Shown here: piece by piece, positions 3-11,941 of the stretch
How the letters are laid out: every line of letters starts with the position of its first letter
Numbering within the stretch: position 1 is the stretch's first letter
Virus record (IMG/VR): IMGVR_UViG_3300048672_001051
Span: 1-64,000 of that record
Reading direction: 5' to 3' (one strand)
Length of the DNA stretch: 64,000 bases
The notes under the pieces: model-generated
What the model saw: only the letters and a program-made list of their open reading frames with translations
Database searches by the model: none
Told to the model about the DNA's origin: nothing
Translations under genes and position numbers: made by a program

Positions 3-660
3 GCAATTGCATATGTTGCCACTGCGAGTTTGCCGCTGACTGTTATTGCCCCTGCCGGTGCTAATTTCGTTGCGTTTAATTTGGCAACAGATACAGCAAC
101 AAGTTGGTCAAATATCCAGTTTGAGTTAGGCGCGGTTGCCACGGCATATGTGCCGTTTGGTGCAAGCTACAAAATCGACGGCGGCGCGATACAAGATCTG
201 CCGCCGGAAACGATTGGCACAGTCGTAGGCTTGCAATCTGCGTTAGATGCAAAGCTAAACGCCGCCGATGTTTTAACAGCAAGTGCAAAGCCATATGACA
301 GGCTGACAGCATCTAAAAATATGTTTGCCGACTCAAATGTCGTGATGGGTAGCTATCTAAATAACGTCGGCGCTATCCGGTTACTAACAGGTTGGACGCG
401 GTCGGGGATCATCCCCGTTGTGGCAGGCCAAACTTACACTCTGTCGGGGAGCAGAAACCGTATAGGTCTGGCGTGGTTTGCCGCATCAACCGATCTGACA
501 GCAATCTCTTATGTCGCCACTGCGGGCTTACCACTCACTGTCACAGCACCGGCGGGGGCTAATTTTGTTGCGTTTAATTTGGCAACAGATACAGCAACGG
601 CGTGGTCAAATGTCCAGCTTGAGCTTGGGGCGGTTGCAACGGCGTATACGCCCTACGTTG
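3..660 (+). repeat. Intragenic tandem domain duplication, period 498 nt (166 aa)
   Basis: About 3-160 matches about 501-660; the 32-mer gttgcgtttaatttggcaacagatacagcaac is identical at 69-100 and 567-598. Confidence 0.9.
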
Positions 661-4492: not shown

Positions 4493-4966
4493 ATGGTTTC
4501 TAGTTATATACTAGAAACCTATCCGTTTCATAAAGAACCGCATACATACTCTAATGGCTTGATTGTCTTAGGGTATGGCCACAGAATGTCCAAAGAAGAG
4601 CCTTATAAGCGTTTAACTAAAAATAAAGCTAAGGAGTTGTTTTATAAAGATAAAATTAAAATCGAGACTTATTTAAATAAGCGAAAACTATATACCTTAA
4701 CCCAAGAAGAATTTGACGTATTGTTCCATTTTATATATGATCACGGTGTGAACGTTACAAACTCATCTCGATTTGCACACTTCCTTTTAACTAAAAACAC
4801 GGAAGAGGCTTGTAAAGAAATTTTACGGTGGAAATCATATAGAGGCTTATATGATAAAAATCTAGCAGATAGAAGAGATTATGATTACAATATATTAAAA
4901 TTTAAACAATACGAAATAGGTATAACAAATGAATCCAAAAGTAGAAGAATTACTTTTAATGGCTAA
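4493..4966 (+). CDS. GH24 (phage lysozyme)-like protein, catalytic residues apparently lost
   Basis: LGYGH, LTQEEFDVLFHFIYDHG, ACKEILRW and LADRR match the GH24 scaffold, but the E/D/T triad positions read Y/Y/V. Start moved to ATG 4493. Confidence 0.7.
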   Translation: MVSSYILETYPFHKEPHTYSNGLIVLGYGHRMSKEEPYKRLTKNKAKELFYKDKIKIETYLNKRKLYTLTQEEFDVLFHFIYDHGVNVTNSSRFAHFLLTKNTEEACKEILRWKSYRGLYDKNLADRRDYDYNILKFKQYEIGITNESKSRRITFNG

Positions 4967-7052
4967 AAATCTTGGCCTTCAAAAAACAACAGAAGATGAG
5001 TCTAAAACTATCGCTGTAGTTACCGAACAACTTCCATCTGTCTACGAGACACCCACTTTAGGTTTAAACCTAAACACAACTTTCACTACAGATCATATAT
5101 TAACTTCTGTGAAAGTCCCCGCATATAAAAATTTAAATCTTACGGCCGATCAAACAGCCACTACACGAGCTCGTGTAGGTAGACTGACCACAGGTGCCAG
5201 CGCTGCAGTTCCGCTGGCTTGTAGGGGCAGTACATGCCCATTTAAAGCTACTTGCCTAGATGGTGACACTCTAGTTATGACTCCAGGCAAAAATGAATTT
5301 GTAAAAATAAAAAATCTAAAGAAAAACTCTCAAGTGTATTCATACAACGCTGAGACAGGTACGCTAGAGAAAGATAGGGTAGTTGCTATTTTAAGCCAAG
5401 GCATTAAAGAAGTATTTAAAATAACAACAGAGACAGGTAAAATATTAATTTGTACTGAAGACCATCCAATCTTGACAACAAATATAAATAATCAACCAAT
5501 TTTTCTTAAGTTGTGTACAGGCCTAACTGTAGGCTCAGCTATTTACGTCACAGACTATGATACAGATTTAATTGAGTTGAACGACTTTGGAGATCTTTTT
5601 GAAGATAAAATTAAAAGCATTTCATATGAAGGTTTAAAAGATGTTTATGATATTAGTGTTAATATAAATAATACATTTATTGCCAACGGCATAGCCGTCC
5701 ATAATTGCCAACCGACAGATGAGCAAGTACTTGTTGCAGATAAAGGTTATAAGAATATCCAAGACTTAGATCCTACAACAGATAAAGTTGTGACGATGAC
5801 TGAAAAGACTGGTGTTATAAATTATACAGGTAAGGAATTCACACTTCACCAGAGAAGTTACTCAGACACAATTTACACAATTAGTAATGGTATTAATTCT
5901 TACAAGTGTACTAAAGATCATATCTGCTATGCGACATTTAACAAAACTTCTATTAAAAAGCACTTAGTATATTTAATGAGAGTTGGCGACAAGTTTAGAG
6001 TTGGTGTCACAACATTAATGCAAGAGATGCCTAAGAATGGGCGTAGAGTAGGCCCTAGATACGCATTCGGATTGAGAGTTCGTGTAAACATGGAGAAAGC
6101 TGATTGTGCATGGATACTAGGTATTTATGACACAAGAGTTGAAGCTTTGTTAGACGAGGAATACTATTCAATTAAACTTAAAGCACCTAAGTCTTTATTT
6201 ATTGCTGATGATGCTGCGAGACATACCTCGTGGAACGGTAAAAGTAAGCGGGTAACTCAACAACAACTTGACGCCCAATTTAATAAGCTGAACGGTTCAG
6301 TTGAATTTTATGCTAACTTTTTAAAATCTAAAAACTTAGACATAGACTACCCATTCGTAACTCGAAATGGTGGTGCAGTAATACAGATAGGCCTGCCTAT
6401 GCACGTCCGCGCATGCAATTTGATTGACGGCTACATGGACATTGTTAGCGTAGATAGTGGTGTGCAAAGTACACAAAAATTACCATTAAAAGTAACTAGC
6501 AAAGATTTTTATCACGGTTCTGTATACTCTCTAGACGTAGCTGAAGACCATAATTATTTCACTACTGGCGGAATCTTAACTAAGAATTGCCCTTACTATG
6601 AAATTAATGCGCATCAAATAGGCGAAGACTGTTTAGTTGAAGCACAATTAATAGAATTTTATACTGCTAAATTTATAGAAGAATTTGCCATAGATCCAAA
6701 CTCAATAACTGAAGTACATCTAATATCTAGATTAGTAGAAATAACTATATACGAAATTAGAATGACTCAGTACTTAAAACTTAACGACCAAGATTTGATG
6801 GCTGATTTTGTCACAGGTACAGACCTTAACGGTGGCGCTATAACAAACAAAGGGGCGTCCATCGCGTTAGATGTCCAGGAAAAACTTTCTCGTCAGAAAA
6901 TGAAAATACTAGAGTCTTTGAATGGTACTAGAGAACGCAAGACTAAAATATTACTAGAAACTAAATCAACAGAGCGTGATAGTAGCTTGTCAGACTTAAG
7001 AAATAAACTAGACAGATTAGCGCAAGAAATTAATGCAAAGGTAGTTAACTAA
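4929..7052 (+). CDS. Cys-cluster protein (about 262 aa after splicing) interrupted by two tandem inteins; possibly packaging-related
   Basis: Exteins ...ACRGSTCPFKAT and CPYYEINAHQIGEDC... flank two complete HINT domains. C-terminal extein looks helical/coiled-coil. Confidence 0.8.
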   Translation: MNPKVEELLLMAKNLGLQKTTEDESKTIAVVTEQLPSVYETPTLGLNLNTTFTTDHILTSVKVPAYKNLNLTADQTATTRARVGRLTTGASAAVPLACRGSTCPFKATCLDGDTLVMTPGKNEFVKIKNLKKNSQVYSYNAETGTLEKDRVVAILSQGIKEVFKITTETGKILICTEDHPILTTNINNQPIFLKLCTGLTVGSAIYVTDYDTDLIELNDFGDLFEDKIKSISYEGLKDVYDISVNINNTFIANGIAVHNCQPTDEQVLVADKGYKNIQDLDPTTDKVVTMTEKTGVINYTGKEFTLHQRSYSDTIYTISNGINSYKCTKDHICYATFNKTSIKKHLVYLMRVGDKFRVGVTTLMQEMPKNGRRVGPRYAFGLRVRVNMEKADCAWILGIYDTRVEALLDEEYYSIKLKAPKSLFIADDAARHTSWNGKSKRVTQQQLDAQFNKLNGSVEFYANFLKSKNLDIDYPFVTRNGGAVIQIGLPMHVRACNLIDGYMDIVSVDSGVQSTQKLPLKVTSKDFYHGSVYSLDVAEDHNYFTTGGILTKNCPYYEINAHQIGEDCLVEAQLIEFYTAKFIEEFAIDPNSITEVHLISRLVEITIYEIRMTQYLKLNDQDLMADFVTGTDLNGGAITNKGASIALDVQEKLSRQKMKILESLNGTRERKTKILLETKSTERDSSLSDLRNKLDRLAQEINAKVVN
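5253..5705 (+). mobile_element. Mini-intein 1 (151 aa)
   Basis: Block A CLDGDTLV, block B CTEDHPIL, block F VYDISV, block G FIANGIAVHN followed by Cys; no endonuclease domain. Confidence 0.93.
5706..6587 (+). mobile_element. Intein 2 (294 aa) with a central GIY-YIG-like domain
   Basis: CQPTDEQVLV...KNIQDL, block B CTKDH, block F VYSLDV, end HNYFTTGGILTKN followed by Cys. Insert VYLMRVGDKFRVGVT...R...EALLDE. Confidence 0.88.
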
Positions 7053-7054
7053 TT

Positions 7055-7609
7055 ATGTTTATGAACCCAGTTGTGAGCCAAGAAGACCGCAAACTAATAG
7101 GGCACTTAGTTAAGAAGAAAAAACAGAGTGGTAAATACACACACGTTTACTACAATAAAAAAGATTCTAATAACAACTTAAAATATGTAACTGGTGAATT
7201 CTACTCTGCTAAGAATAAAGCACATATGACATATAGGTCATCTTACGAACTGAAGTTCTTACAAACATTAGAAAGTAATGATGACGTTGAAAGATATGCG
7301 TCTGAGTGCTTTACACTACCATATATAAATATTAGTGGTGTAAGAAAAACATATATACCAGACCTGTTAGTTGTATATAAGTCGGGTAAAATTGATATTT
7401 GTGAAATTAAGCCTAAGGCTATGCTAGTTAACGGTGACGTTCAAAGAAAAGCTGCAGCCTGTAGGCAGTTTATAATCTCTAATTTTAAAGGTATTGACTG
7501 CCAGTATAAATTTGTCACAGAAGATGACTTATTTATAAACAGTACGGATTATTCAAAGTTTTTAAAAAGTATAAAAGTAGGTAAAGAATACCATGGCAAC
7601 CAATCGTGA
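7055..7609 (+). CDS. TnsA-like PD-(D/E)xK endonuclease / head-completion nuclease (T4 gp4-like)
   Basis: YRSSYE, YASE.FTLPY, TYIPDLLV, EIKP motifs. Confidence 0.8.
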   Translation: MFMNPVVSQEDRKLIGHLVKKKKQSGKYTHVYYNKKDSNNNLKYVTGEFYSAKNKAHMTYRSSYELKFLQTLESNDDVERYASECFTLPYINISGVRKTYIPDLLVVYKSGKIDICEIKPKAMLVNGDVQRKAAACRQFIISNFKGIDCQYKFVTEDDLFINSTDYSKFLKSIKVGKEYHGNQS

Positions 7610-8984: not shown

Positions 8985-9746
8985 ATGAGTAACAGAGCTA
9001 AATTAGACGAATTACTTACGCTTAACCCAGATCTTAAATTTGACTCTAAACGTTTTGATACTTTAAAAGATAAAGATCAGAAAAAATTATTAAAAATGTT
9101 ATCCAGCGATGCCTCTAAAGGTAATGGTACTTATAAATTTACCGCAGGTGTTAATACAAACTTTGATTCAAAAGGTACAGCTGGCGTTTTAAACAAAGCA
9201 AAAGCTATGGTTAACCACACTATAGGGCCAAGTGCCGTAGAGGCCTACGCAAACTCTTTTGGATTTATGACCTCAGGTCAGCGTGCAATGAGTGCAAACT
9301 CATCAATGCTTGGTAAATTGTCCTACAAAGCAATACCTGCCTTTGGTGCATTTACAGCGCTATCTGGCGCTGTAGACGGTGAAGATCCGTTCGAGTATGT
9401 GGGTGAACAGATGGCCTTTGGTGGTGCTACGCAGGGTTATAGACTCGGCAGCACACTTGGAACTAGTACGATGGGTCGATTCGGTGCAGGCTTAGTTGGA
9501 GGAGCATTTATAGGCGCTGCTGTTTACGGAGGTTTTGCTGCGGCAAAAGACTTATCAAGTAACACTTCAAGTATAGCTAAAGCTGCCAAAAAAATGTACA
9601 CAAAAGAATTAAGTGTCGCATCATTTGACAATGATAAAACCTTAACAATGAGGCAAGCCGCATTAAGTAAGTTGAGTAATAGCGCGATAAACGACAGAGG
9701 ACTACTTTTAGGTAACGAAGCAATGATACTGCGAGGTTCATTATAA
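8985..9746 (+). CDS. Gly/Ala-rich hydrophobic protein, putative virion/ejected protein
   Basis: Glycine-zipper-like segments FGAGLVGGAFIGAAVYGGFAAA and AIPAFGAFTALSGAV; coupled to terL by TAATG. Confidence 0.5.
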   Translation: MSNRAKLDELLTLNPDLKFDSKRFDTLKDKDQKKLLKMLSSDASKGNGTYKFTAGVNTNFDSKGTAGVLNKAKAMVNHTIGPSAVEAYANSFGFMTSGQRAMSANSSMLGKLSYKAIPAFGAFTALSGAVDGEDPFEYVGEQMAFGGATQGYRLGSTLGTSTMGRFGAGLVGGAFIGAAVYGGFAAAKDLSSNTSSIAKAAKKMYTKELSVASFDNDKTLTMRQAALSKLSNSAINDRGLLLGNEAMILRGSL

Positions 9747-11941
9747 TGGCAGCAATTGATCTATTTGAGATGAGTTGGAAAGACTATTTAGAAATTAAAG
9801 GTTTTAATAAACAAAAAGAAGAAACGATGGCAGAGACGTGTAGGAAATGCCGAGAAGATCAACTTAAAAAACATAAAAAAATTACTATAAAATGTACTGG
9901 CGAGCGTACGATAGAGCATGAATTTACTCAGAAGTATGGTGAAAAAACAGCGAAGGCTGTATTAGCTCATTTGCAAGACGACCCGACAGAGATGCTGCAA
10001 GCGTCGTCTGCATACAATCCTTACGATTTTATGCGCGCAAATATTACAGACCCTAAATTGTTTAACCCACGCTGGTACCAAGAGAAAGCTGTACTTTGCT
10101 CTGCGACTAAAAAAGTTTTACGGATGGGTCGTCGCTGTATAGCAAAAGATGAACTTGTACTGATGGCCGATTACAGTTATAAAAAAATTCAAGATATAGA
10201 GCCTGGCGATTATGTAATAAGTAATAAGTATGACAAAGCTACTACACAAATAGTTACACATAAATACAATAACGGTGTTCAGCCGGTGTATGAAGTGCTC
10301 ACAGAGAAAAATCATAAAGTAAGATTAACCGAAGACCATGAAATTTTAACTAAACGAGGCTGGGTGACAATAGCTCAAGGCTTATCTAATGTTGACTATA
10401 TAAGTACTCTAGCCTCAAAAGAGTCTACAGATTATGAGTATTTACGAGTAAAGAGTATAACTCCGATAGGTCTTCAAGAAGTCTACGATATTACAGTTCC
10501 AGGTACTAATAACTTCACTGTAGAAGGACTGACGGTACACAATTGCGGTAAGACATACTCTATGGTTGTTGGTATGTTGCACAACTTACTAACAAAGCCT
10601 GGGTACACAGTACTAATAGCTGCACCGCAAATAACTATGATTGACGAGATAGTTAGCGCTTGCGAAGAAATCTGTAGGCAGCTTAAGACAGAGTATCCTA
10701 TAGTTAGAAATTCTTCTAGCCCTATTATAGAAATTGAGTTTAATAATGGCTCTATAATAAAAGGTGTTACAACAGCCAACGACGCAAAATCTGCTCGTGG
10801 TAAAAGCGCCGATTTGATTTGGCTAGAAGAAGCTGACTTTATTGAAAAGAAGGCCTTAAACTCTATTCTAGGGGTTTTGGCAGATAGGTCAGACATCGAA
10901 CTTTGGGTCTCTTCAACACCAATTGGTGAAAGAAATCTTTACAGTCTAGCTCAAAGACCAGATATAAGAGAATTTCACTATCCAACTTTTGTTGTTCCCC
11001 ACTACGAGTCTGAAAACTTAGACGAGTTTTTCCGTGGAGCAATGACACAGTCTGGTTATGTACAAGAAGTGATGGCTGAGTATGGTGTAGACGTTGATAG
11101 TGTTTTCCAGATCATGTTTATTGAGGAGAGTACTGAACTAGAGCGAGATCCTTACTATTCAGTAGAGAGTGTGTTAGCTAACAGACAGGATTTTATAGTC
11201 TTTATAGGTGTAGATTGGAACCATGATAAAGTTGGTACAAGAATTGTTGTAACAGCTTACTCACGTTCAAGAAATATTTTATTTATTGTTAAGAAAGAGA
11301 AAGTGTCATCAGTTGGTTGGACACAAGCATTAGCTGTGGAGTCTATAGTTAATTTAAACAGATTGTTTGCAGCTGATCATATATATGTAGATGAAGGTTT
11401 TGGTATAGGCCAAGTTACAGAGCTTAGAAAAAAAGGTGTAGAAGCCTATGGTAAAGTTGCAAACGATCATCCAGATTTAAAATTAGAGCAGACTGTATCA
11501 GTGCAATTTGGATCTAGTATAAAAATACATGATCCTATAACTGGTGAAGTTTACAGCAAGCGTGTTAAACAATACATGGTTGAGAATTTATCAAACACGC
11601 TAGAGAAGAAATCTTTATACTTCTCAAGTGTTGAAGATAATGATATAATCATGCAAATGAAGAACTATCTTATAAAAAATGTTTCTGTTAACGGAGCCAA
11701 GTCTTATAGTTTTAGAGATAAGCAAATAGCTGATCACGACTTAGATGCATTTATGTTGACTATCTACGCGTTTAATGTAGAATACGGGGATTATATAAGA
11801 CCACAAAGTCTAGAGTATGCGGCAGGATTTGGCAAAGAATTGCTAGAGCCTGCGCTGAAAATGGATAGTCTTTACGACGCAATTGGTGTATATGTCTCCC
11901 GTACATCAAAATCAAAATTTAAACCAAAACGTAAATGGTAG
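9746..11941 (+). CDS. terL: Terminase large subunit, intein-containing
   Basis: PRWYQ adenine-binding motif, Walker A RMGRR/CGKT split by an intein, Walker B LIWLEEAD, motif III SSTP, nuclease FIGVDWN / YVDEG / DHDLDA. Confidence 0.93.
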   Translation: MAAIDLFEMSWKDYLEIKGFNKQKEETMAETCRKCREDQLKKHKKITIKCTGERTIEHEFTQKYGEKTAKAVLAHLQDDPTEMLQASSAYNPYDFMRANITDPKLFNPRWYQEKAVLCSATKKVLRMGRRCIAKDELVLMADYSYKKIQDIEPGDYVISNKYDKATTQIVTHKYNNGVQPVYEVLTEKNHKVRLTEDHEILTKRGWVTIAQGLSNVDYISTLASKESTDYEYLRVKSITPIGLQEVYDITVPGTNNFTVEGLTVHNCGKTYSMVVGMLHNLLTKPGYTVLIAAPQITMIDEIVSACEEICRQLKTEYPIVRNSSSPIIEIEFNNGSIIKGVTTANDAKSARGKSADLIWLEEADFIEKKALNSILGVLADRSDIELWVSSTPIGERNLYSLAQRPDIREFHYPTFVVPHYESENLDEFFRGAMTQSGYVQEVMAEYGVDVDSVFQIMFIEESTELERDPYYSVESVLANRQDFIVFIGVDWNHDKVGTRIVVTAYSRSRNILFIVKKEKVSSVGWTQALAVESIVNLNRLFAADHIYVDEGFGIGQVTELRKKGVEAYGKVANDHPDLKLEQTVSVQFGSSIKIHDPITGEVYSKRVKQYMVENLSNTLEKKSLYFSSVEDNDIIMQMKNYLIKNVSVNGAKSYSFRDKQIADHDLDAFMLTIYAFNVEYGDYIRPQSLEYAAGFGKELLEPALKMDSLYDAIGVYVSRTSKSKFKPKRKW
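10136..10543 (+). mobile_element. Mini-intein (136 aa) in the TerL Walker A motif
   Basis: CIAKDELV...LTEDHEIL...VYDITV...FTVEGLTVHN followed by CGKT. Confidence 0.93.

What the first reader, a model, noticed from the sequence alone, without database searches (positions are those of the whole stretch)
5950..6360. Intein 2 carries a GIY-YIG-like domain instead of LAGLIDADG and ends in Lys-Asn
Seen: between blocks B and F lies HLVYLMRVGDKFRVGVT...GLRVRVNMEKADCAWILGIYDTRVEALLDEEYY, with no LAGLIDADG motifs; the penultimate residue is K, not H. Known: GIY-YIG/T5orf172 nucleases show VY-x-[YF][KR]IG-x-T, a conserved Arg and a helix Glu; most intein endonucleases are LAGLIDADG. Inference: an atypical homing nuclease that could mobilise both tandem inteins as one unit, with the mini-intein hitch-hiking.
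Basis: partly seen in the sequence, partly recalled or inferred. Interest (0 to 1): 0.6.

Follow-up and report, generated by a model that had tools for sequence, protein, structure and literature searches.

The report
Intein with GIY-YIG-like homing nuclease domain
The second of two back-to-back inteins in a jumbo-phage gene carries, where inteins normally hold a LAGLIDADG nuclease, a conserved domain predicted to have the GIY-YIG nuclease fold; it belongs to a large, unannotated intein family (also in Bacillus phage SPO1), and the accessible intein literature does not list this nuclease type in-frame in inteins.

Summary
ORF 4929..7052 (707 aa) holds a mini-intein (5253-5705) followed with no spacer by a 294-aa intein (5706-6587) that ends Lys-Asn|Cys.

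Between blocks B and F lies a ~150-aa insert (5958-6401) that matches no Pfam, PHROG or PDB sequence. Three independent lines place it in the GIY-YIG fold:
- An AlphaFold model (pLDDT 85-93) has GIY-YIG nucleases as its six best matches among 48,161 PDB representatives, though Z is only 4.0-5.1.
- BFVD ranks 4-50 are mostly GIY-YIG homing endonucleases.
- hhalign against GIY-YIG/UvrC profiles gives P = 1e-4 to 2e-5, against at least 0.1 for controls.

T5orf172 membership is not supported. The family has 1,821 clusters at 50% identity, mostly inteins in UvrD helicases and DNA methylases. Tyr89, Arg98, Gly100, Arg126, Trp136 and Glu151 are conserved in 95-99% of domains.

Orthologues carry 0, 1, 2 or 3 inteins. 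Against a sister phage, intein 2 alone shows low synonymous divergence, with a sharp edge at 5706, and that phage's nuclease core has decayed. Intein 2 therefore looks like an independently mobile homing element. The idea that both inteins move as one unit is not supported. A non-His penultimate residue occurs in about 30% of the family.

The parts
4929..7052 (+). Host gene (707-aa precursor). Function is unknown. It sits in a conserved neighbourhood: lysozyme, host gene, TnsA-like nuclease, then three genes further on the large terminase. It has a four-Cys motif around the intein sites.
   Evidence: synteny in L040-L046
4929..5252 (+). N-extein (108 aa), ends ...Cys-Pro-Phe-Lys-Ala-Thr
   Evidence: Junction fixed by the intein-less orthologue P0162
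5253..5705 (+). Intein 1: 151-aa mini-intein, Cys1 ... His-Asn, no nuclease domain
   Evidence: Pfam Intein_splicing E 1.7e-15, full length
5706..6587 (+). Intein 2: 294-aa class-1 HINT intein. It begins Cys-Gln-Pro directly after intein 1's Asn and ends Lys-Asn; the +1 residue is Cys 6588-6590.
   Evidence: AF2 pLDDT 92.6; Foldseek PDB hits are inteins/HINT
5706..5957 (+). Intein 2 HINT N-part (blocks A and B; Thr69-x-x-His72)
5958..6179 (+). GIY-YIG-like core (intein residues 85-158): strand, strand, extra hairpin, helix, strand, helix. Key codons are Tyr89 5970-5972, Arg98 5997-5999, Gly100 6003-6005, Arg126 6081-6083, Glu130 6093-6095, Trp136 6111-6113 and Glu151 6156-6158.
6180..6257 (+). 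Linker (residues 159-184). Its sequence is conserved within the lineage of this host gene but is modelled with low confidence. It may contact DNA (inference).
   Evidence: pLDDT about 55 at residues 171-180
6258..6401 (+). Two-helix extension (residues 185-208) and the return to HINT, with invariant Leu206 and Pro216. Candidate DNA-binding module (inference).
6402..6587 (+). Intein 2 HINT C-part (blocks F and G), ending Thr-Lys-Asn
6588..7049 (+). C-extein (154 aa), begins Cys-Pro-Tyr-Tyr
6630..6632 (+). Cys codon of a second intein site (Gly-Glu-Asp|Cys-Leu-Val-Glu). It is empty here but holds a same-family intein in P0008 and P0011.

Best explanation
Intein 2 is a self-splicing class-1 intein. 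Its endonuclease slot, between blocks B and F, holds a ~150-aa GIY-YIG-superfamily nuclease domain instead of LAGLIDADG or HNH. The core is strand-strand-helix-strand-helix with an extra hairpin. Tyr89 corresponds to the GIY tyrosine. Arg98-Val-Gly100 replaces YIG. Arg126 and Glu130 lie on the first helix. Glu151 aligns with the metal-binding Glu of UvrC. A short two-helix extension, and perhaps the HINT body, would bind DNA. The most likely mechanism is homing. During co-infection the intein protein cuts alleles of the host gene that lack intein 2 near the Thr|Cys junction, and break repair from the occupied allele copies intein 2 in. Shown here: the sequence, the predicted fold, residue conservation, distribution over several host proteins and sites, orthologues with 0 to 3 inteins, a locally low synonymous divergence confined to intein 2, and decay of the nuclease core in a sister phage. 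Inferred: nuclease activity, the target site, and that the element still homes.
For: The whole intein is homologous end to end, insert included, to inteins in the SPO1 gp34.33 helicase, the Vibrio phage RYC helicase and S. suis prophage methylases. The models are confident: pLDDT 92.6 for the intein and 85.5 for the insert alone. An unbiased structural search of 48,161 PDB representatives puts six GIY-YIG nucleases at ranks 1-6: PD-T4-3 at Z 5.1, rmsd 2.6 over 68 residues, then Slx1 twice, I-TevI, HIGLE and UvrC. EF2693, T4 EndoII and Eco29kI appear lower down. In BFVD, ranks 1-3 are intein-bearing relatives and ranks 4-50 are mostly GIY-YIG homing endonucleases. hhalign of the insert profile gives P=1.2e-4 over 63 columns against 12 GIY-YIG domains, and P=2.4e-5 (probability 75%) against 6 UvrC domains. 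These alignments pair VY(LM) with G(V)Y, RVG with YVG, and Glu151 with the catalytic Glu. The reversed control gives 0.17 and 30 column shuffles give at least 0.1. Key residues are 93-99% conserved over 190 domains. Between the window and P0006, the insert core has dN 0.15 with saturated dS, so it is as constrained as the best-conserved extein part. The insert is the most conserved segment of the whole precursor against distant orthologues: 58-65% identity, against 32-38% for the exteins. For mobility, the family sits in UvrD helicases, N6/N4 methylases and this gene at two sites. Orthologues have 0 (P0162), 1 (P0011), 2 or 3 (P0008) inteins. Against L045, third-codon identity is 156/196 in intein 2 and 83/151 in intein 1 (Fisher p=1.3e-6). 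dS is 0.13-0.54 in intein 2, against 0.8 to saturated in the flanks, with a sharp edge at 5706. The L045 nuclease core is decayed: dN 0.48, in-frame deletions of 21 and 102 nt, and Arg126 lost. That is as expected late in a homing cycle.
Against: No experiment supports any of this, and the structures are predictions. The structural scores are low. Z is 4.0-5.1, and the tool warns that Z under 8 can reflect a common arrangement. Foldseek against PDB is not significant (best GIY-YIG hit E=2). The Pfam GIY-YIG and T5orf172 models do not detect the domain. The second signature tyrosine (YIG) is replaced by Arg. The canonical Arg position does not align in sequence, because Arg126 lies after an inserted hairpin. 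The conserved Asn was not located. The domain is short and lacks the NUMOD or zinc-finger DNA-binding modules of known GIY-YIG homing enzymes. The window/L045 identity map has another high-identity patch at 4750-5049 that holds no intein, so ordinary phage mosaicism could contribute to the signal.
Confidence: 0.7

Rival explanations
1. The insert has a GIY-YIG-like shape but is no longer, or never was, a nuclease. It would be a structural or DNA-binding filler retained because splicing needs an in-frame, folded spacer.
For: Structural scores are weak. The YIG tyrosine is missing. No Pfam model matches. A sister phage tolerates a decayed and shortened core.
Against: Polar residues at GIY-YIG catalytic positions are 93-99% conserved over 190 diverged copies. 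dN is low on the core. The insert is more conserved than the splicing domain and the exteins. A mere spacer would drift, as it does in L045.
Confidence: 0.12
2. One reading: the nuclease mobilises both tandem inteins as one cassette, with the mini-intein hitch-hiking.
For: All seven orthologues with intein 2 at this site also carry the mini-intein, with zero spacer (P0001, P0006-P0010, P0097). No allele with only one of the two was found.
Against: Between the window and L045, the low-divergence tract starts exactly at intein 2's first codon. The 60-nt bin 5649-5708 has 46/60 identical bases and bin 5709-5768 has 56/60. Intein 1 has third-position identity 0.55, like the exteins. Against distant orthologues intein 1 is 38-41% identical, like the exteins at 32-38%, while intein 2 is 52-58%. 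Co-occurrence is explained equally well by an old, fixed mini-intein in this clade.
Confidence: 0.12
3. The domain is a member of the T5orf172 (Mug113) branch.
For: The short motif aromatic-Arg-Val-Gly-x-Thr resembles the Lys-Ile-Gly-x-Thr of T5orf172, and hhalign pairs these 9 columns. A Mug113 protein appears at rank 12 in BFVD.
Against: PF10544 finds a true T5orf172 gene elsewhere in this genome (155306-155503) but not the insert. It also misses the insert in five other records that carry such inteins. hhalign gives P=0.069, whereas classical UvrC-type profiles give 2e-5. The control also shows that my small profiles cannot link T5orf172 to GIY-YIG at all (P=0.27), so this test is weak.
Confidence: 0.06

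Closest known systems
Bacillus phage SPO1 gp34.33 helicase intein (also in CampHawk, Goe2 and SP82G)
   Same: Homologous over the full 294 residues at about 29% identity, including the insert. It has the same CQP start and the same motifs: VYLM, RVG, R...E, W, E.
   Different: It sits in a UvrD-type helicase, stands alone rather than in tandem, and ends His-Asn|Ser. The record annotates it only as 'intein', with no nuclease type.
GIY-YIG homing endonucleases (I-TevI, Seg proteins) and UvrC/Slx1 nuclease domains
   Same: Predicted core topology. They are the top structural neighbours. The profile alignment covers the GIY tyrosine, the Gly of YIG and the catalytic Glu.
   Different: The known ones are free-standing, intron-encoded, or lie between split-intein halves. 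This one is fused in-frame inside a HINT domain. YIG is replaced by RVG. There is an extra hairpin before the first helix. There are no NUMOD or zinc-finger DNA-binding modules. The Pfam model does not match.
Canonical LAGLIDADG or HNH inteins (PI-SceI type; phage HNH inteins)
   Same: Same architecture: a nuclease domain inserted between blocks B and F of a class-1 intein. The expected life cycle is the same: homing, fixation, then nuclease decay.
   Different: The nuclease superfamily differs. There are no LAGLIDADG or HNH motifs or Pfam hits.
Fractured genes with split inteins and free-standing GIY-YIG genes (Dassa et al. 2009, PMC2677866)
   Same: An association of an intein with a GIY-YIG-type homing nuclease in phage-like DNA.
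   Different: There the nuclease is a separate gene between split-intein halves. That paper states that GIY-YIG was not known inside inteins. Here it is in-frame in a contiguous intein.

Membership tests
Class-1 intein (HINT) | N-terminal Cys/Ser, C-terminal Asn, and a +1 Cys/Ser/Thr | tested here: met
   Cys 5706-5708, Asn 6585-6587, Cys 6588-6590. The junction is confirmed by the intein-less orthologue P0162.
Class-1 intein (HINT) | Block B Thr-x-x-His and a HINT fold | tested here: met
   Thr69 and His72 are nearly invariant. The AF2 model hits inteins and BIL/Hedgehog HINT domains, with TM by target up to 0.77.
Class-1 intein (HINT) | Penultimate His in block G | tested here: not met
   The residue is Lys293. 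Within the family the counts are 120 HN, 20 CN, 10 GN, 8 KN, 4 SN, 4 RN, 2 AN and 3 others, out of 171. Inteins without this His are known to splice (own knowledge: Chen, Benner and Perler 2000).
Class-1 intein (HINT) | Pfam Intein_splicing (PF14890) above its cut-off | tested here: not met
   Intein 2 alone scores E 0.048 and 13.9 bits against a cut-off of 35.8. Intein 1 passes.
Class-1 intein (HINT) | Protein splicing actually occurs | not testable with these tools
   This needs expression of the precursor.
GIY-YIG nuclease superfamily | Three-stranded sheet with flanking helices (strand-strand-helix-strand-helix core) | tested here: met
   The predicted strands are 86-93, 96-103 and 134-141, and the helices are 122-129 and 144-157. 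GIY-YIG nucleases take ranks 1-6 of 48,161 and dominate BFVD ranks 4-50. The scores are low and this rests on a prediction only.
GIY-YIG nuclease superfamily | Tyr of the GIY motif on strand 1 | tested here: met
   Tyr89 is 98% conserved and aligns with the G-V-Y of UvrC.
GIY-YIG nuclease superfamily | Tyr of the YIG motif on strand 2 | tested here: not met
   The position holds Arg98 (98% conserved). The following Gly100 is kept.
GIY-YIG nuclease superfamily | Catalytic Arg on the first helix | tested here: inconclusive
   Arg126 (95%) lies on the first helix of the model. hhalign does not pair it with the UvrC Arg, because a hairpin is inserted before the helix.
GIY-YIG nuclease superfamily | Metal-binding Glu on the helix after strand 3 | tested here: met
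   Glu151 is 99% conserved and aligns with the UvrC catalytic Glu.
GIY-YIG nuclease superfamily | Conserved Asn after the Glu helix | not tested
   No model coordinates were available for a residue-level superposition.
GIY-YIG nuclease superfamily | Pfam PF01541 match | tested here: not met
   No hit on the insert.
T5orf172 (PF10544) | Pfam model or profile similarity | tested here: not met
   No hit. hhalign gives P=0.069 over 9 columns.
LAGLIDADG / HNH intein endonucleases | Signature motifs or Pfam models | tested here: not met
   Nothing in Pfam at E<=1. The structural neighbours are not of these folds.

The most novel reading that the evidence does not exclude
These inteins represent an unrecognised, abundant class of contiguous inteins, with at least 1,800 clusters in phages, bacteria and archaea. 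Their in-frame homing enzyme would be a GIY-YIG-superfamily nuclease. Because that nuclease recognises mainly one flank, it can invade alleles already occupied by another intein. This would stack inteins with zero spacer, as seen here, in P0097 and in the helicase P0024.
Probability: 0.4. Interest if true: 0.75.

Novelty: new variant of a known kind. Interest (0 to 1): 0.62.

Why it matters
Reviews and a 2025 survey of intein nucleases list LAGLIDADG and HNH as the in-frame nuclease types. GIY-YIG appears there only as a free-standing gene between split inteins (PMC2677866, PMC7765530, bioRxiv 10.1101/2025.01.02.630785). An in-frame GIY-YIG-type domain in a family of about 1,800 clusters would add a nuclease class to intein biology. 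It would give unannotated helicase and methylase inteins a name. It would also supply compact, naturally protein-fused GIY-YIG nucleases for engineering. The model phage SPO1 carries a member, so homing can be tested in Bacillus subtilis. The zero-spacer tandem inteins raise two testable questions: the order of splicing when one Cys serves as both +1 and Cys1, and target recognition of already occupied alleles.

Tried and rejected
- blastn of the gene against 50,697 phage records found no match.
- Sequence searches of the intein and of the insert profile against PDB found nothing.
- Pfam and PHROGs on the insert gave only noise. Tox-URI2 at E 0.05 lay on a different stretch, and Thioesterase scored E 0.06.
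- Foldseek of the insert model against PDB found nothing below E 0.7. The whole-intein model found only HINT folds.
- The ESM Atlas shape search returned only other intein-bearing helicases and methylases, which shows family size but not fold identity.
- The T5orf172 profile comparison was not significant, and the control shows the test has little power.
- The exteins were searched separately by reference. I did not build or search the joined extein sequence. Pfam and PHROGs found nothing. The viral-contig scan with the C-extein found nothing. The Atlas feature search with the intein-less orthologue gave only weak leads (YonG, Terminase_4 at 0.80-0.83), which I do not rely on.
I repeated it with A1.
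- Reads: only one run holds the stretch, and it is probably the source assembly, kept as contigs. A single contig covers 4400-7700 with no joints, so nothing can be said about intein-less alleles in that population or about expression.
- The short hits in the big search (154-345 aa) looked like free-standing versions, but they are fragments of intein-bearing genes.
Full report
**1. What is there**

The window is the first 64 kb of a 229,656-bp virus record estimated to be 98% complete, so it is a jumbo phage. ORF 4929..7052 (+) encodes 707 aa and has four parts:
- N-extein, 4929-5252.
- Intein 1, 5253-5705: a 151-aa mini-intein ending His-Asn. Pfam Intein_splicing matches at E 1.7e-15.
- Intein 2, 5706-6587: 294 aa. 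It begins Cys-Gln-Pro immediately after intein 1's Asn and ends Thr-Lys-Asn.
- C-extein, from Cys 6588.

An intein-less orthologue, P0162 (264 aa), lies in the same gene neighbourhood. It reads ...Cys-Pro-Phe-Arg-Thr-Lys|Cys-Pro-Tyr-Phe..., which fixes the junction.

No LAGLIDADG or HNH signature exists.

**2. The insert belongs to a large intein family**

tblastn shows that the whole of intein 2, insert included, is homologous to other phage inteins at about 29% identity over 100% of its length. These are the inteins in the SPO1 gp34.33 UvrD-type helicase and its relatives, the Vibrio phage RYC helicase, and the adenine methylases of Streptococcus suis prophages. Klebsiella phage KP13-16 has a helicase with one LAGLIDADG intein and one intein of this family.

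IMG/VR gave 35 loci. GTDB genomes gave 22 loci, from Planctomycetota, Solibacteraceae, Levyibacteriota, a cyanobacterium, a Nanobdellota archaeon and S. suis.

A profile of the insert alone (A3, 24 sequences) matched 1,821 clusters at 50% identity (E<=1e-3), of which 1,574 had E<=1e-10. Almost all hits lie inside long proteins. Those I scanned are UvrD helicases and N6/N4 methylases. Of the 160 proteins I hold, 33 carry two or three such inteins. The short hits are fragments, not free-standing genes.

No Pfam, PHROG or PDB sequence model covers the insert.

**3. Fold**

AlphaFold2 with the 24-sequence alignment gave pLDDT 92.6 for the whole intein and 85.5 for the insert alone. The HINT part matches solved inteins.

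The insert's secondary structure runs as follows:
- strand 86-93
- strand 96-103
- a small extra hairpin, 105-121
- helix 122-129
- strand 134-141
- helix 144-157
- a low-confidence linker
- helices 185-195 and 199-208

Foldseek against PDB gave nothing significant. The best GIY-YIG hit was UvrC at E=2.

The Foldseek-independent search of 48,161 PDB representatives placed GIY-YIG nucleases at ranks 1 to 6:
- PD-T4-3: Z 5.1, rmsd 2.6 over 68 residues
- Slx1: Z 4.6 and 4.5
- I-TevI: Z 4.4, rmsd 2.8 over 65 residues
- At-HIGLE: Z 4.3
- UvrC: Z 4.0

Three more GIY-YIG proteins appear further down that list. The Z values are low, and the tool warns that Z below 8 can be a common arrangement. The argument therefore rests on all six top ranks being GIY-YIG nucleases, not on the scores.

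In BFVD, ranks 1-3 are family members and ranks 4-50 are overwhelmingly GIY-YIG homing endonucleases, at E 0.01-0.16.

**4. Profile test**

I then ran hhalign in the Python box, with these results:
- Insert vs 12 GIY-YIG domains: P=1.2e-4 over 63 columns.
- Insert vs 6 UvrC domains: P=2.4e-5, probability 75%.
- Reversed target: P=0.17.
- 30 column shuffles: P at least 0.1.

The alignment pairs V-Y(89) with G-V-Y, R(98)-V-G(100) with Y-V-G, and Glu151 with the catalytic Glu. The canonical Arg is not paired. Arg126 sits on the first helix, but after the inserted hairpin.

Against T5orf172, P=0.069 over 9 columns. The control GIY-YIG vs T5orf172 comparison also failed (P=0.27), so that test has little power. 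Pfam PF10544 finds a genuine T5orf172 gene elsewhere in this genome but not the insert.

My conclusion is that GIY-YIG superfamily membership is supported. Specific T5orf172 membership is not.

**5. Is the domain functional?**

Conservation over 190 domain copies is very high:

| Residue | Conserved |
|---|---|
| Tyr89 | 98% |
| Met91 | 98% |
| Arg98 | 98% |
| Gly100 | 98% |
| Arg126 | 95% |
| Glu130 | 93% |
| Trp136 | 98% |
| Glu151 | 99% |
| Leu206 | 96% |
| Pro216 | 99% |

The window's copy has all of them. Against distant orthologues of the host gene, the insert is the most conserved segment of the precursor, at 58-65% identity. The HINT parts are 43-58% identical, intein 1 is 38-41%, and the exteins are 32-38%. 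Against P0006, the core has dN 0.15 with saturated dS.

**6. Mobility**

Orthologues of the host gene carry different numbers of inteins:
- 0 inteins: P0162.
- 1 intein: P0011, at a second site that corresponds to Cys 6630-6632 here.
- 2 inteins: the window, P0006, P0007, P0009, P0010 and P0097.
- 3 inteins: P0008, which has the tandem pair plus the second site.

The closest relative, L045 (P0007), is about 77% identical in DNA over 8 kb. Intein 2 outside its core is 89-92% identical. Other measures for this pair:
- Third-codon identity is 156/196 in intein 2 and 83/151 in intein 1 (Fisher p=1.3e-6).
- dS is 0.13-0.54 in intein 2, against 0.78 in the N-extein, 2.3 in intein 1 and saturated in the C-extein.
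- The edge lies at the first codon of intein 2: 46/60 identical bases in the bin before it and 56/60 in the bin after it.
- The tract fades about 100 nt into the C-extein.

This is the pattern expected if intein 2 alone was exchanged after the phages diverged. One caveat is that another high-identity patch, at 4750-5049, has no intein.

In L045 the nuclease core is decayed. It has dN 0.48, close to the neutral level for that tract, in-frame deletions of 21 and 102 nt, and Arg126 lost. Its HINT parts are 96-97% identical in protein to the window's. This fits the homing cycle, in which the nuclease decays after fixation.

**7. The tandem arrangement and Lys-Asn**

Intein 1 diverges like the exteins, so the hitch-hiking unit idea is not supported by the data at hand. 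It is not excluded either, because no allele with only one of the two inteins was found.

Zero-spacer tandems recur. A UvrD helicase, P0024, has two inteins of this family joined ...Thr-His-Asn|Cys-His-Pro.... One inference is that the nuclease reads mainly one flank, so an occupied allele remains a target.

Of 171 complete C-termini in the family, 120 end HN. The rest end CN (20), GN (10), KN (8), SN (4), RN (4), AN (2), and NN, QN and LN (1 each). At this particular site the orthologues have K, K, K, R, R, A and N. A non-His penultimate residue is therefore a common family trait.

**8. Literature**

Dassa et al. 2009 state that GIY-YIG and Vsr-like nucleases were not known inside inteins (PMC2677866). 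A 2020 review and a 2025 survey list LAGLIDADG and HNH as in-frame types. They add antisense LAGLIDADG, Vsr-like and EndoVII-like variants, and mention GIY-YIG only through the split-intein case. Phrase searches for an intein-borne GIY-YIG found nothing.

Subscription literature was not searchable, so prior description cannot be excluded.

**9. Verdict**

This is a real feature. The best reading is a homing intein with an in-frame, divergent GIY-YIG-type nuclease, in a large and unannotated family. Activity, target and splicing remain untested.

Noticed in passing
window 9746-11941 (+), intein about 10133-10543: The large terminase (731 aa) carries a mini-intein in its Walker A loop: ...Gly-Arg-Arg|Cys-Ile-Ala...His-Asn|Cys-Gly-Lys-Thr. 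The L045 relative's terminase also has an intein.
   Followed up: partly
window 5705|5706: There is zero spacer between the two inteins. Cys 5706-5708 must act both as the +1 nucleophile of intein 1 and as Cys1 of intein 2. The same arrangement occurs in P0006-P0010 and P0097. It also occurs between two inteins of the nuclease-bearing family in the helicase P0024.
   Followed up: partly
window 7055-7609 (+): The next gene matches Tn7 TnsA-like endonuclease N-terminal domain (E 5.5e-9) and a PHROG labelled head closure. It follows the host gene in every orthologous locus seen.
   Followed up: no
window 4750-5049: A second patch of unusually high DNA identity to L045 (0.92-0.93 against a background of about 0.77) spans the end of the lysozyme gene and the start of the host gene. 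It has no intein and may be a recombination tract.
   Followed up: no
window 5220-5252 and 6588-6632: Both intein sites fall on Cys residues of a four-Cys motif (C-x4-C-x5-C-x13-C in the spliced product). The host protein has no Pfam or PHROG family. It lies four genes upstream of the large terminase, so a packaging role is possible but unproven.
   Followed up: partly
L040:3001-6114 (P0008): This orthologue has three inteins: the tandem pair plus a second nuclease-bearing intein 14 residues downstream. Two nuclease-bearing inteins of one family sit in one small gene.
   Followed up: partly
P0153 (159 aa, metagenome protein): The nuclease-like domain follows a DHH-type motif with no recognisable HINT N-part. 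It may be a fragment or a non-intein fusion.
   Followed up: no
own genome G000:C1:155306-155503 (-) and 146462-146665 (-), outside the window: There is a genuine T5orf172 gene (28 bits), and a weak further intein-like match (E 1e-3) in an 848-aa frame.
   Followed up: no
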